In this document: piece after piece, positions 19,701 to 22,700 of the stretch | How positions within the stretch are numbered: the first letter of the stretch is position 1 | Layout: each line of letters begins with the position of its first letter | Assembly: GCF_032062105.1 (NCBI RefSeq) | Contig: NW_026935147.1 | Coordinates: forward strand, 1 to 63,277 | DNA: 63,277 nucleotides | From: Saccostrea cucullata | Taxonomy: Eukaryota | Direction: 5' to 3' | Program-made: the position numbers and the translations under genes | Notes under the pieces: generated by a model | Seen by the model: the letters and a program-made list of their open reading frames with translations, nothing else | Databases searched by the model: none | Told to the model about the DNA's origin: nothing

Positions 19701-22700
19701 ATAGGAAGAAAATTACCCTTAAAGAACTACAGTCTCTGATAGGCTTATTAAACTTTGCTTGTTTAGTTGTCGTACCTGGTAGAGCTTTTCTTAGGCGCAT
19801 TATAGATCTTACTTGTGGTGTGTCTAATCCTTCCCATTTTATCAGGCTAACATGTGAAACTAGGGCTGACCTGCAAATGTGGTCTCATTTTATTGAAAAT
19901 TACAATGGAAAATCAGTAATTTTACCAGATTTTTTTTACATCATCAGATAAAGCATTATTATACACAGATGCTTCAGGTTCTATTGGCTTTGCAGGAGTT
20001 CTTGGTACAGAATGGCTTGCTCATGGGTGGGATGTGGTACCAGATTTAGAACATCACCAGATAGCTATTAAGGAGTTATTCCCTATTGTTATTGCTCTTG
20101 AAATTTGGGGGTCAAGCCTTGCTAATCAGAAAATATTGTTTATGTCAGATAACGAGGCCGTTGTGCATGCAGTCAACAAACAATCTTGCAAAGAAAAAAC
20201 TCTTATGAAGCTTATAAGACGCCTTGTGCTAACATCTCTCTCATACAATATATTCTTTAAAGCAAAGCACATTGCGGGCAAGAAAAATGTATTAGCAGAT
20301 AAACTCTCTCGATTTCAATTTCAGGAAGCCTTCAGAGTAGCTCCTCACTTGAATACACACCAGACTGCAATCCCTGTAGAACTTTTGAAAATTTGAGTAC
20401 CGTTTGTCAACGGCTGCTAGCCTCTGCTTTGTCTCCATCATCGGCTCAAGCTTACAGACGTACATGGGAATTGTTAAGATCATGGAAGCCCACTGTCTCT
20501 CTTCCCGTTTCAGTTGTAGATGTGTGTAACTTTATTGGTCATTTGTTTTCGGTCAATTACTCACCAAGCAGCATAGCATCTCATATATCTGCAATTAGTT
20601 ATGTCCACAAAATTTTAAATATGCATGACCCAACGCAGGCCATTACTACTAGAAAGATTTTAAAGGGTTGTCAGTCGTCTGTTCCAACAAAAGATACACG
20701 TTTACCTATCACACCGGACATTTTACAAAAAATATTAAATGCCCTAGCTCACACTGTCCCTCAGTATTCACTTCGCATCCTGCTTCGGGCTCTGTTTTTG
20801 TTAGCTTTTCATGCTTTTTTGAGATTAGGGGAAGTTGCTGTAAAATCACTACATAGCGGCAAGCATGTTTTACAGCGCGCGGATGTCACTTTTGACTATG
20901 TAGGGCCTACATTGTCAGCAGCTCAAATCATCATGCGTGAGTTCAAAACAAATAAGCAACATACCCCTTTGGTTCTTTCCGTCCAAGCTATTCAAGGTTC
21001 ATCATTTTGTCCGGTGCATGCGTTACTTGAATACTTACAATATTCAAAGCACACATCTGGCCCATTATTTCAAACAATGGATGCTCTCCCAATTTCTTAT
21101 GCAAAAGTAACCACCCATTTAAAATCAGCAGTAGAGTTTATAGGGCTTGATTCAAACAACTTTAAGGGTCATAGTTTCAGAATAGGCGCAGCTACCTACG
21201 CAGCCTCCTTAGGCTATTCTGAAAGCCTTATTCAAAAATTAGGTCGATGGAACTCTGACGCCTTTCGTAGGTACATACGCATCAACTCCTTCCGTTTTTA
21301 GGTAACAAGGTGACCCCTTCCCCTCTTTTTGCTATATAAGCTCCTTTCTGTAATTACACACGGTGGGTCAGCATTTGGCTGCTGCCAATAAACCTGAAGT
21401 GTTTTAATAGTTATTAGGAAGGACAGTTCAGAAGTTGTCTGCTGTCATTAGGTTTACAGTTCAGAAGTTGTCTGCTGTAAAGATAATTCTATTAATGAAC
21501 AGTTTCTATTTTTATTTTATTCTCGTAGTGGTTCATCTTCTTTGCTCTTACCAATTTCCATAGGTAAAAATTTAACGTTAATTTTTCTGCAACAACAATT
21601 CTTGTCCCTAATGGGAAGATGTACTAATTTTTTAATTTTTTCATTCTGGTGAAATTTATCAGTTTTTAAGTATATATGACCTTGCTGGTTTACCAAGTGT
21701 GTGATTGACAGGTCAGAATTTGTCTGCTGTTATAAGACATTGTCCATTTGTGTATAAGACACCATAGAAATTTTGTTGACTATCATGTTGAGTGTAGTGT
21801 GAACTTAACACAGTCCACAGTAACTTGTCTTGTGTATTCAAAACATGTCAGAACTTTGACTTCTGTAATGAAATGTTGATTAATTTTTCTTGTTCTTGAA
21901 TATTTGGCAGGTCAGAATATGTCTGCTGTCACCTGTTTTCAATGTCGGTATCATATGATATGCAGTTGCAATTTATGTATATTGTGTTCCCCTTTCCATA
22001 TACATATGATTTTTGTTAATACTGGTAATCCTGGCCAGGCAGCCTTTGGGTGGGGGGATCCAATTCTTAATTGGATTTGTGGCCTAAGTTTTGTACCTAC
22101 CCACCTTTTTTATGGGCAGGCAGTTTATTGATATTCCTATTTTTTACATATGTGTTTACAGTAGGGGGCATGTCAGGTATTTTTGGTACTCATGTGTCAT
22201 GAGGCCCCCTATCTGTTGATTTGTGTAAACATCTTTTTTCATATGTAGTATTTTAGGGGGTCATGATGTGTTCATCACCACATGTATTATTAAAAGGGTT
22301 ACATGTTTATGAATGACCCCCTGTTTTGTATATATGTTATTCGACATTTACAAAATAAATGACATTTATTCATTCCAACACAATTGTTCTTATTTCGCCT
22401 GCCCTGTGCAAAAAACGAGCTCAGTCTCCCTGGCTAGGTTACACAAACTAAGGAACATAAATTAGTGATTATTGTAAATAATAACTTTTATGTGACATGT
22501 GCAGTGTTTATTTAGTTTTCACTTATTTTACCCATATCCGTCTTACGGGTGTAAACGTCTTGTGGCCTAGTTTTAACCTAACCCAAAATTTTGCCTTTTA
22601 GCCAATCATAATTCAGCAATCTGCCATGCTGCATTCATTGAATTTTGATAGAAGCCACACAAATTTGGTGCAGTGAAATTTGTACCCACCTTCCACCCCT

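What the first reader, a model, noticed from the sequence alone, without database searches (positions are those of the whole stretch)
21362..21931. Covarying bulged stem-loop family in the Ngaro 3' UTR
Seen: five copies share one architecture of lower stem, 2-nt GU/UU bulge, 4-bp upper stem and AKWUG pentaloop. They are GGTGG-GT-CAGC-ATTTG-GCTG-CTGCC (21362), GACAG-TT-CAGA-AGTTG-TCTG-CTGTC (21422), TTTACAG..CTGTAAA (21453), TGACAG..CTGTTA (21706) and TGGCAG..CTGTCA (21905). Changes are compensatory and not CpG-type (CAGA/TCTG to CAGC/GCTG; GAC/GTC to TAC/GTA). G-U pairs mark the sense RNA, and the flanks are unrelated, so this is not a simple tandem repeat. Inference: a cis-acting RNA motif I do not recognise as described (Gag zinc-finger packaging signal, localisation or stability element). 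With the 5' array it suggests an RNA-structure-based control system in this retroelement.
Basis: partly seen in the sequence, partly recalled or inferred. Interest (0 to 1): 0.8.

Follow-up and report, generated by a model that had tools for sequence, protein, structure and literature searches.

The report
Conserved bulged hairpins after Ngaro recombinase gene
A small bulged RNA hairpin, repeated three to nine times just after the last gene of Ngaro retrotransposons, is kept in shape but not in letters across oysters, a scallop and probably corals, so it is a real and apparently undescribed control signal whose binding partner is still unknown.

Summary
The five hairpins sit at window 21362-21931, 60-630 nt after the stop of the tyrosine-recombinase (YR) ORF of an Ngaro element.

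The shared form is a lower stem of free sequence, a 2-nt 5' bulge (mostly GU or UU), a CAG(N)/(N)CUG upper stem and a short loop.

- **Where it recurs:** on the sense strand after the YR stop in all 17 YR loci first checked. These cover at least seven families of this genome, Crassostrea virginica, Ostrea edulis, Saccostrea echinata, Argopecten irradians and an unnamed ENA assembly; the Pinctada locus has only one weak copy.
- **Independent set:** the hairpin also occurs in 17 of 68 metagenomic Ngaro loci. One clade of these has a stony-coral protein as its nearest named relative.
- **Covariation:** lower stems covary heavily (score 0.497 against 0.152 shuffled; 0 of 500 shuffles reach it).
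- **Conservation:** the hairpins are better conserved than the spacers between them.
- **Prior description:** Rfam and the literature held here describe nothing like it.

Best reading: a cis-acting protein-binding element of the genomic RNA. Function and partner are inferred, not shown. Support for RNA over cDNA is only moderate (G·U to A·C 36:18), and expression could not be tested. I rate it a new member of a known kind, interest about 0.66.

The parts
21362..21386 (+). Hairpin 1: GGUGG / GU bulge / CAGC-AUUUG-GCUG / CUGCC. This is the type with a C-G closing pair. Positional counterparts lie right after the YR stop in L061, L063 and C. virginica L064.
21422..21446 (+). Hairpin 2: GACAG / UU / CAGA-AGUUG-UCUG / CUGUC
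21453..21481 (+). Hairpin 3: UUUACAG / UU / CAGA-AGUUG-UCUG / CUGUAAA
21706..21732 (+). Hairpin 4: UGACAG / GU / CAGA-AUUUG-UCUG / CUGUUA (one G-U pair)
21905..21931 (+). Hairpin 5: UGGCAG / GU / CAGA-AUAUG-UCUG / CUGUCA (one G-U pair)
20393..21301 (+). Tyrosine recombinase ORF (Phage_integrase). Its stop codon is the landmark after which the hairpin array begins in every lineage.
21302..22080 (+). Non-coding stretch between the YR stop and repeat B1. It has no ORF of 100 aa or more and holds the hairpins.
18502..18855 (+). ORF at the gag/pol junction with CCCH-type and CCHC-like zinc fingers. It is a candidate RNA-binding partner; this is inferred only.
18710..20396 (+). Reverse transcriptase (RVT_1) and RNase H-like (RVT_3) ORFs of the element
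15669..15715 (+). Split direct repeat A1, equal to A2 at 22638-22684 (98%)
22081..22462 (+). Split direct repeat B1, equal to B2 at 22746-23126 (98.7%)
22638..22684 (+). Split direct repeat A2
22746..23126 (+). Split direct repeat B2

Best explanation
The hairpins are a family of cis-acting structured elements in the sense (genomic) RNA of Ngaro retrotransposons. They are placed in 3-9 copies in the untranslated region right after the last ORF. What selection keeps is a helix junction: a G-C pair, a 2-nt 5' bulge (GU or UU) and a C-G/A-U/G-C helix above it. This junction sits on a lower stem whose sequence is free. That is the signature of a protein-binding site read by shape plus a few fixed bases. 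I take the most likely partner to be a protein of the element itself: the zinc-finger protein at the gag/pol junction, or RT. The repeated sites would then mark the full-length RNA for assembly into the replication particle or for recruitment of RT. What is shown: existence, strand, position, conservation, covariation, and retention in a family that has lost most of its YR gene. What is inferred: that it acts as RNA, that a protein binds it, and which protein.
For: - **Position and strand.** A descriptor hairpin (lower stem of at least 3 bp, 2-nt bulge, YAG..CUR) occurs at 4.58 per kb in the 900 nt after the YR stop. Elsewhere on the sense strand it is 0.119 per kb, and there are none on the antisense strand of the same stretch, over 17 loci.
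- **Independent set.** In 80 metagenomic loci not used to derive the descriptor, the densities are 1.13 per kb (sense, after the YR), 0.07 (antisense) and 0.13 (upstream).
- **Sequence-blind scan.** A scan allowing any 3-bp upper stem found at least 3 like hairpins on the sense strand in 12 of 71 loci. Ten of those 12 were CAG/CUG. The antisense strand gave 0 of 71.
- **Covariance model.** A model trained on bivalve hairpins gave 27 hits at E<=1 in those loci and two extra contigs (L072, L073). Of these, 26 were sense and 25 lay after the YR stop.
- **Covariation.** In A2 (52 hairpins), 83.8% of cells are paired against 64.4% shuffled. The covariation score is 0.497 against 0.152, with 0 of 500 shuffles as high; slid controls give 0.08-0.13. 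Pairs 5-27, 6-26 and 7-25 each show 5 pair types with 0-6 unpaired cells.
- **Lower stems in the independent set.** They average 5.0 bp against 3.5 bp in control hits (p=1.6e-7), with 38 different lower-stem sequences among 49 hairpins. G-C sits next to the bulge in 33 of 49, and the bulge is GU in 31 of 49.
- **Hairpins against spacers.** Identity is 98/88, 93/81, 84/75 and 50/25 % in four comparisons.
- **Defective family.** A family that shares one internal YR deletion still carries its 4 hairpins; three copies were examined (L052-54), and its hairpin variant occurs on 13 contigs.
- **Strand.** G·U outnumbers A·C 36:18 at internal stem positions.
- **Candidate partner.** Zinc fingers are encoded by the element.
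Against:
- The G·U to A·C bias is only 2:1. A first, cruder count in the metagenome set was 22:21.
- Single hairpins are weak (-7 to -10 kcal/mol). The whole UTR folds no better than shuffles, and its minimum-energy fold breaks at least three of the five.
- Zinc-finger type does not track hairpin presence.
- The core is invariant across elements whose YR is only 35-40% identical, while gag is far less conserved (30-46%). That pattern fits a very conserved host protein at least as well as an element protein.
- Some clades lack the canonical form or carry a remodelled one.
Confidence: 0.42

Rival explanations
1. This is the same RNA element, but its partner is a conserved host protein. The hairpins would recruit a cellular factor that exports, stabilises or protects the unspliced genomic RNA. 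One example is shielding a message with a long 3' UTR from nonsense-mediated decay just after the last stop codon. The Rous sarcoma virus stability element does this (from memory), and the MPMV CTE recruits NXF1 for export (from memory).
For: The core junction (G-C, GU bulge, CAG/CUG) is the same in lineages whose YR is 35-47% identical, and probably in hosts as far apart as bivalves and corals. Element gag proteins are only 30-46% identical even within this genome. The array always starts 18-190 nt after the last stop codon. There are several copies, as with host-factor sites in other 3' UTRs.
Against: No host factor with this specificity is known to me. Clades that lack or remodel the motif live in similar hosts, which looks more like co-evolution with an element protein. 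Nothing was tested directly.
Confidence: 0.28
2. The hairpins act mechanically in reverse transcription rather than as a recognition tag. They could be pause or strand-transfer sites, or part of the still unknown priming step of YR retrotransposons.
For: The primer of reverse transcription in DIRS-type elements is unknown, and a 3' hairpin has been proposed for DIRS-1 (PMC7192593). The hairpins lie just upstream of the B1-A2-B2 repeats that are thought to bridge the cDNA ends.
Against: The hairpins are internal, 150-700 nt from B1, not at an RNA end. The variable number (1-9) and spacing argue against a precise mechanical role. The conserved bulge and fixed bases point to recognition rather than mere stability.
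Confidence: 0.1
3. The structure forms in single-stranded cDNA, not RNA. It would then be read by the tyrosine recombinase or a host DNA protein, as integron attC sites and the CTX phage attP are folded single strands with extrahelical bases read by tyrosine recombinases.
For: DIRS-1 amplifies through linear single-stranded cDNA (PMC7192593). The element encodes a YR. A fixed orientation relative to the ORFs is equally expected for minus-strand cDNA.
Against: First-strand cDNA is antisense. There the G·U pairs become A·C mismatches, yet sense G·U outnumbers A·C 36:18. There are many copies, placed away from the A/B repeat junctions where recombination is expected. The stems are short for stable DNA hairpins.
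Confidence: 0.1
4. There is no function: the array is a tandem repeat that happens to be palindromic and hitch-hikes in the UTR.
For: In several lineages the hairpins are units of regular tandem arrays. Tandem arrays are common in transposon UTRs.
Against: Only the hairpin part is shared between lineages, while spacers and periods differ. Lower stems change sequence but keep pairing. The element persists across YR divergence down to about 35% identity and at the same place and strand. Hairpin columns are more conserved than spacers.
Confidence: 0.05

Closest known systems
Lentiviral TAR hairpin (HIV-1/HIV-2), from established knowledge
   Same: The architecture matches: a lower stem, a 2-3-nt pyrimidine-containing 5' bulge, a 4-bp upper stem and a small loop. 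Recognition centres on the bulge and the fixed pairs that flank it.
   Different: TAR lies at the 5' end of the transcript, in one or two copies, and has a different sequence. It acts in transcription elongation through Tat and P-TEFb. There is no sequence or Rfam relation.
Iron-responsive elements, five copies in the transferrin-receptor 3' UTR (established knowledge)
   Same: Both are several copies of one small bulged hairpin spread over a 3' UTR, each a site for the same protein.
   Different: An IRE has a single C bulge, a 5-bp upper stem and a CAGUGN loop. Here there is a 2-nt bulge, a CAG/CUG stem and a free loop. Rfam's IRE models did not match.
3'-UTR stem-loops of stringent LINEs read by their own RT (eel UnaL2 type; R2 3' UTR), from established knowledge
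   Same: Both are retroelement 3'-UTR structures needed in cis and kept by non-autonomous derivatives. Here a YR-deleted family keeps its hairpins.
   Different: Those are single structures at or near the very 3' end of the RNA. These are multi-copy and internal, upstream of the B1-A2-B2 repeats, in a YR retrotransposon whose priming is unknown.
Dispersed packaging signals of RNA viruses and retroviral psi hairpins; the MPMV constitutive transport element
   Same: Both use repeated short stem-loops with a shared recognition feature that mark the genomic RNA for capsid, nucleocapsid or an export factor. The CTE also lies between the last ORF and the 3' repeat.
   Different: No capsid or nucleocapsid binding is shown here. 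The sequences are unrelated, and the partner is unknown.
Integron attC / CTX attP folded single-stranded sites of tyrosine recombinases
   Same: In both, a tyrosine recombinase is encoded nearby and there is a hairpin whose shape and extrahelical bases are conserved rather than its sequence.
   Different: Those are single recombination sites in DNA at the exchange point. Here there are many copies away from the repeat junctions, with a G·U bias that favours the RNA-sense strand.

Membership tests
Any Rfam 15 family | A match to a curated covariance model | tested here: not met
   cmscan of window 14000-24000, both strands, permissive filters, E<=1: 0 matches.
Ngaro retrotransposon (the host element) | RT/RNase H plus a tyrosine recombinase ORF in one orientation | tested here: met
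   RVT_1 at 18710-19951, RVT_3 at 20034-20396, Phage_integrase at 20393-21301.
Ngaro retrotransposon (the host element) | Split direct repeats A1-[ORFs]-B1-A2-B2 | tested here: met
   A: 15669-15715 = 22638-22684 (98%). B: 22081-22462 = 22746-23126 (98.7%). B1, A2 and B2 are separated by 175 and 61 nt and are not contiguous.
Iron-responsive element | A single C bulge 5 bp below a CAGUGN hexaloop | tested here: not met
   The bulge is 2 nt (GU or UU), the upper stem is 4 bp, and the loop is 5 nt AKWUG. There is no Rfam hit.
Simple tandem repeat / satellite | Head-to-tail copies of a constant period whose whole unit is similar | tested here: not met
   The window spacings are 60, 33, 252 and 199 nt with unrelated flanks. 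Other lineages do have regular arrays, but the units share only the hairpin.
Double-stranded DNA palindromic protein site | Conserved half-site sequence on both arms, symmetric spacing | tested here: not met
   The lower-stem sequence is free while its pairing is kept. The 2-nt bulge is always on the same arm, and antisense matches are absent.
Structured cis-acting RNA element (general kind) | Base pairs kept through compensatory changes across homologues | tested here: met
   Ten of 12 pairs have double changes, and the covariation score is 0.497 against 0.152 shuffled, 0 of 500. The caveat is that the inner three lower pairs were partly selected by the search pattern; pairs 4-28 and 5-27 were not.
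Structured cis-acting RNA element (general kind) | The region is transcribed, and the structure forms in the RNA | not testable with these tools
No probing data are available.

The most novel reading that the evidence does not exclude
The CAG/CUG bulged hairpin is an ancient signature element of a large part of the Ngaro superfamily. It would have been inherited since before bivalve and cnidarian lineages of the element separated, and it would be the long-sought cis signal through which these poorly understood retrotransposons select their RNA for reverse transcription or packaging. The different hairpin arrays seen in other clades, and the 5' GGACCAUA array, would then be parts of one RNA-structure code for this group of elements.
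Probability: 0.25. Interest if true: 0.8.

Novelty: new member of a known kind. Interest (0 to 1): 0.66.

Why it matters
Tyrosine-recombinase retrotransposons (DIRS, Ngaro) are the least understood major group of retroelements. The primer of reverse transcription, the way the RNA is chosen, and any packaging signal are all unknown; PMC7192593 says so for DIRS-1. A short, easily synthesised hairpin with a defined invariant core gives a concrete handle for binding assays with the element's zinc-finger protein, RT and YR, and for mutate-and-compensate transposition tests. It is conserved over deep divergence and placed at a fixed spot.

It is also a candidate new RNA family for Rfam. The two covariance models built here already separate true sites from background. 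It could serve as a practical marker for annotating Ngaro 3' regions and their non-autonomous derivatives in mollusc and cnidarian genomes.

Tried and rejected
- **RNA-seq evidence.** I did not try another route, so expression and transcript ends are untested.
- **Genome fetch limit.** I worked with 15 smaller fetches instead, so many of the 126 covariance-model hits in the genome were not inspected in context.
- **Generic descriptor.** A bulged-hairpin descriptor with no sequence constraint is useless as a statistic, because background is about 6 per kb. I replaced it with constrained and recurrence-based scans.
- **Strand test.** The first version let chance extensions count and gave 22:21 in the metagenome set. 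I replaced it with a count of internal pairs only.
- **Zinc fingers.** I looked for a correlation between zinc-finger type and hairpin presence and found none.
- **Whole-UTR fold.** It gave no support (z -0.62).
- **L059.** I examined it as a possible short non-autonomous element. It is an old degenerate fragment and uninformative.
- **L056 and L058.** Their motif (CAGATCAGAATTAGTCTGTTG) is a single copy with no outer stem and no Ngaro proteins nearby. I treat it as unrelated or chance.
- **Missing look-ups.** Three named proteins (Saccostrea cucullata, Mizuhopecten, Mytilus) were not on record for a contig look-up, so Mytilus and Mizuhopecten remain unchecked.
- **Rejected readings.** I rejected an IRE, TAR membership, a double-stranded DNA palindromic site and a miRNA-like precursor (the stems are far too short).
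Full report
**1. What is in the window**

The stretch 21362-21931 lies in a full Ngaro-type element.

- The ORFs run on the + strand. They are an SGNH/GDSL-like hydrolase (15846-16529, below Pfam's cut-off), a gag-like ORF (17759-18505), a short zinc-finger ORF (18502-18855), RT (18710-19951), an RNase H-like ORF (20034-20396) and a tyrosine recombinase (YR, 20393-21301).
- Split direct repeats frame the element. 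A1 at 15669-15715 equals A2 at 22638-22684. B1 at 22081-22462 equals B2 at 22746-23126.
- No ORF of 100 aa or more lies between the YR stop and B1. The hairpins therefore sit in a non-coding stretch 60-630 nt after the last stop codon.
- Eleven copies of this stretch at 96-100% identity (the window's own among them), and four at 76-86%, are in the same 1.17-Gb genome. The family was active recently.
- The nearest named YR proteins are from oysters, with Crassostrea virginica at 75%.

**2. The observation**

The five copies are exactly as described (coordinates under parts). They are not chance.

- The 21-nt pattern finds only these sites in the window, against 0 in 100 shuffles.
- In the genome it has 104 matches against 1 for the reversed control.
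- Each copy folds alone into lower stem, 2-nt bulge, 4-bp stem and pentaloop. The energies are small, -7.4 to -9.6 kcal/mol with z -0.6 to -2.0.
- The 779-nt UTR as a whole is no more stable than shuffles (z -0.62). Its minimum-energy fold keeps hairpin 2 clearly and hairpin 5 in part.

The case therefore rests on comparison with other copies, not on energy.

**3. Same place, same strand, many lineages**

I fetched places that match the pattern and mapped the element's proteins on them. The hairpins lie just after the YR stop, in the sense orientation, in further families of this genome whose YR is 46-92% identical to the window's:

- L051/55/57: loop AGUMU.
- L052-54: bulge GC or AC, lower stem UUCAG/CUGAA.
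- L060: five copies at a 37-nt period.
- L061/62, L063 and L070.
- L071: seven copies at about 72 nt, with lower stem UUGACUG/CAGUCAA.

Contigs that encode YR relatives in other species show the same thing:

| Source | Hairpins | Notable features |
|---|---|---|
| C. virginica | 3 | first is again the CAGC/GCUG type right after the stop |
| Ostrea edulis | 4 | upper stem CAGU/ACUG |
| Saccostrea echinata | 4 | lower stems UGAG/CUCA, CUGG/CCAG, GAGACAUG/CAUGUCUC; one upper stem UAGC/GCUA |
| Argopecten irradians | at least 8 | 80-nt array, GGAAG/GU/CAG-UACWGC-CUG/CUUCC |
| ENA assembly ERZ21939214 | 5 | lower stems up to 16 bp |
| Pinctada imbricata | 1 | weak |

Two contigs filed under a Sedimenticola metagenome-assembled genome are probably host DNA. 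One carries seven copies of AUCAG/GU/UAGC-AUAAG-GCUA/CUGAU. The other carries a CAA..UUG version.

A descriptor gives these densities over 17 loci. It asks for a lower stem of at least 3 bp, a 2-nt 5' bulge and YAG..CUR:

- 4.58 per kb in the 900 nt after the YR stop.
- 0.119 per kb elsewhere on the sense strand.
- Zero on the antisense strand of the same stretch.

This descriptor was written after I had seen these data, so I looked for an independent set.

**4. An independent set**

A scan of public metagenome contigs with a YR alignment returned 80 loci. Their YR is 31-47% identical to the window's. RT/RNase H lies upstream wherever the contig reaches that far.

- **Density.** CAG-type bulged hairpins occur at 1.13 per kb after the YR on the sense strand. 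The antisense strand has 0.07 per kb and upstream sequence 0.13 per kb. Of 68 loci, 17 have two or more.
- **Sequence-blind scan.** I allowed any 3-bp upper stem and asked only that one triplet recur at least three times. The sense strand gave 12 of 71 loci and the antisense strand 0 of 71. In 10 of the 12 the triplet was CAG/CUG, with a GU, UU, UA or UG bulge.
- **Lower stems.** These hairpins have lower stems of 5.0 bp on average, against 3.5 bp for descriptor hits elsewhere (p=1.6e-7). There are 38 different lower-stem sequences among 49 hairpins. G-C sits next to the bulge in 33 of 49, and the bulge is GU in 31 of 49.
- **Covariance model.** A model built only from the bivalve and ERZ21939214 hairpins (R2) gave 27 hits at E<=1 in 292 kb searched on both strands. 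This search covered the 80 loci plus contigs L072 and L073. Of the 27, 26 were sense and 25 lay after the YR stop.

**5. Distribution on the YR tree**

On a YR tree the hairpin-bearing loci fall in three supported clades:

- The bivalve clade.
- The ERZ21939214 clade.
- A 16-row clade of metagenome loci.

The label needs 7 changes on the tree against a shuffled mean of 21, with 0 of 500 shuffles as low. For the 16-row clade the nearest named protein comes from the stony coral Oculina patagonica at 63%. The host of that clade is therefore probably a cnidarian, but this is not established.

At least one clade that my scan scored as negative carries a remodelled version. It has CAGUU-U-GC-AUGG-GC-GGCUG on lower stems up to 17 bp, with z -5.2 for one copy. 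The family is thus wider than the canonical form.

**6. Covariation**

- **First alignment.** In 51 hairpins from oyster lineages, the closing pair of the upper stem is A-U 42 times, C-G 5 times and U-A 4 times, and is never unpaired. The outer lower pairs show three to four pair types.
- **Second alignment.** Over 52 hairpins from all bivalve lineages plus ERZ21939214, 83.8% of cells pair against 64.4% after shuffling. Ten of 12 pairs have double changes, and the covariation score is 0.497 against 0.152 (0 of 500). Sliding the partner by 1-3 columns gives 0.08-0.13.
- **Invariant core.** What does not vary is the A-U pair of the upper stem (52 of 52) and its C-G and G-C neighbours (51 of 52 each). 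The G-C below the bulge holds in 47 of 52.

One caveat applies. The inner three lower pairs were partly fixed by how I found the hairpins. Pairs 4-28 and 5-27 were not, and they pair in 42 and 46 of 52 rows with five pair types each.

Hairpin columns are also better conserved than the spacers between them. Identity is 98 against 88 %, 93 against 81 %, 84 against 75 % and 50 against 25 % in four pairwise comparisons.

**7. Which strand, and RNA or DNA**

A fixed orientation relative to the ORFs is expected for the RNA and for minus-strand cDNA alike, so it decides nothing. The only discriminator available is wobble pairs.

- In the first alignment G·U outnumbers A·C 32:6 by cells, but many rows are related.
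- A strand-symmetric count of internal stem positions gives 19:9 in the bivalve set and 17:9 in the metagenome set, 36:18 together. My own binomial estimate is about p=0.02.
- A cruder version had given 22:21 in the metagenome set.

I read this as moderate support for the sense strand, and hence for RNA. It is not proof.

**8. What it most likely does**

The pattern is a free lower stem, a fixed junction of G-C, a GU bulge and a CAG/CUG helix, and a loop that differs between lineages. That is the pattern of a site read by a protein. Several copies per element suggest cooperative or multivalent binding.

- A family that shares one internal YR deletion still has its four hairpins. I examined three copies (L052-54), and its hairpin variant occurs on 13 contigs. 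This fits a signal needed in cis by elements that borrow proteins.
- The element encodes a CCCH-type and a CCHC-like zinc finger at the gag/pol junction. Zinc fingers of these kinds are in nearly all relatives that reach far enough upstream.
- I put the element-protein reading first at 0.42. In this reading the hairpins mark the genomic RNA for assembly or for RT.
- The host-factor reading (export, stability, protection after the last stop codon) is close behind at 0.28. The invariance of the core across very divergent elements suits a conserved host protein.
- A mechanical role in reverse transcription, a cDNA-level role and no function follow at 0.10, 0.10 and 0.05.

None of these was tested directly.

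**9. What is known**

- Rfam 15 has no match at E<=1.
- Full-text searches for Ngaro with stem-loop, hairpin, oyster or bivalve found no description of such an element.
- Papers on DIRS-1, Cafeteria Ngaro and Xenopus Ngaro do not mention one.
- The DIRS-1 paper states that the primer and the start of reverse transcription are unknown (PMC7192593).
- The library does not hold Repbase reports or subscription papers, so 'undescribed' is a limited statement.

**10. Verdict**

This is a real, conserved, structured cis element. It is new as a family, and ordinary in kind, since retroelement UTR hairpins are well known. Its position is well defined and its core is clear. Its function is open and its breadth is only partly mapped.

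Noticed in passing
window 16630-17420; L055, L057, L060, L063: The hairpins of the 5' array (stem UGYG/CRCA around a GGACCAUA loop) between the SGNH ORF and gag are also present in other Ngaro families of this genome. Their stems differ (for example GUCGAGCG/CGUUUGAC in L060). They were not seen in the C. virginica, Pinctada, Saccostrea or Argopecten loci, whose upstream reach was limited.
   Followed up: partly
window 15846-16529; L055, L057, L060, L064: The SGNH/GDSL-like hydrolase ORF lies upstream of gag, just after repeat A1, in this and related oyster Ngaro families (53-65% identity). In Xenopus Ngaro it is described after the YR ORF (PMC9210276). The Pfam match is below the gathering score.
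   Followed up: partly
window 22036-22130; L019 1505-1590; L064 6930-7020; L069 4715-4800; L074: A block near or at the start of repeat B is conserved across families, species and the ERZ21939214 clade. It reads ..GCCUUUGGGUGGG..GGAUUUGUGGCC..CCCACCUUUUU..GGCAGGCA, and GGGUGGG and CCCACC can pair. It is a candidate for the recombination or bridging site.
   Followed up: no
window 18502-18855: The short ORF that overlaps the gag end and the RT start carries C-x8-C-x4-C-x3-H followed by C-x2-C-x3-H-x4-C. The gag-like ORF before it has no cysteine but has a basic N-terminus (PPKRK, KTRKKR). Pfam gave no hit for either.
   Followed up: partly
L052, L053, L054 (and the same hairpin variant on 13 contigs): This Ngaro family shares one internal deletion of the YR gene (residues about 90-232 are missing) and has a partial RT, so it has presumably spread as a non-autonomous element.
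   Followed up: partly
P0098, P0100, P0113; L072, L073: Ngaro elements with RT and YR sit on contigs filed under bacterial metagenome-assembled genomes (Sedimenticola sp., Candidatus Thiodiazotropha taylori). This is most simply animal host DNA binned with the symbiont.
   Followed up: no
L128 3680-3800; L137 1100-1300; L123 3426-4054: Some Ngaro-like clades without the CAG hairpin have other repeated hairpins after the YR ORF. Examples are ACAUG/CU/GAA-UCCG-UUC/UGUGU three times, and AUGU/AG/CUU..AAG/ACAU three times. L123 has a 56-nt repeat. An array of hairpins may be the general rule and its sequence lineage-specific.
   Followed up: partly
window 21846-21868: GUCAGAACUUUGACUUCUG between hairpins 4 and 5 looks like a decayed sixth copy, with a CAGAA/UUCUG stem and no bulge. 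The covariance models did not pick it up.
   Followed up: no
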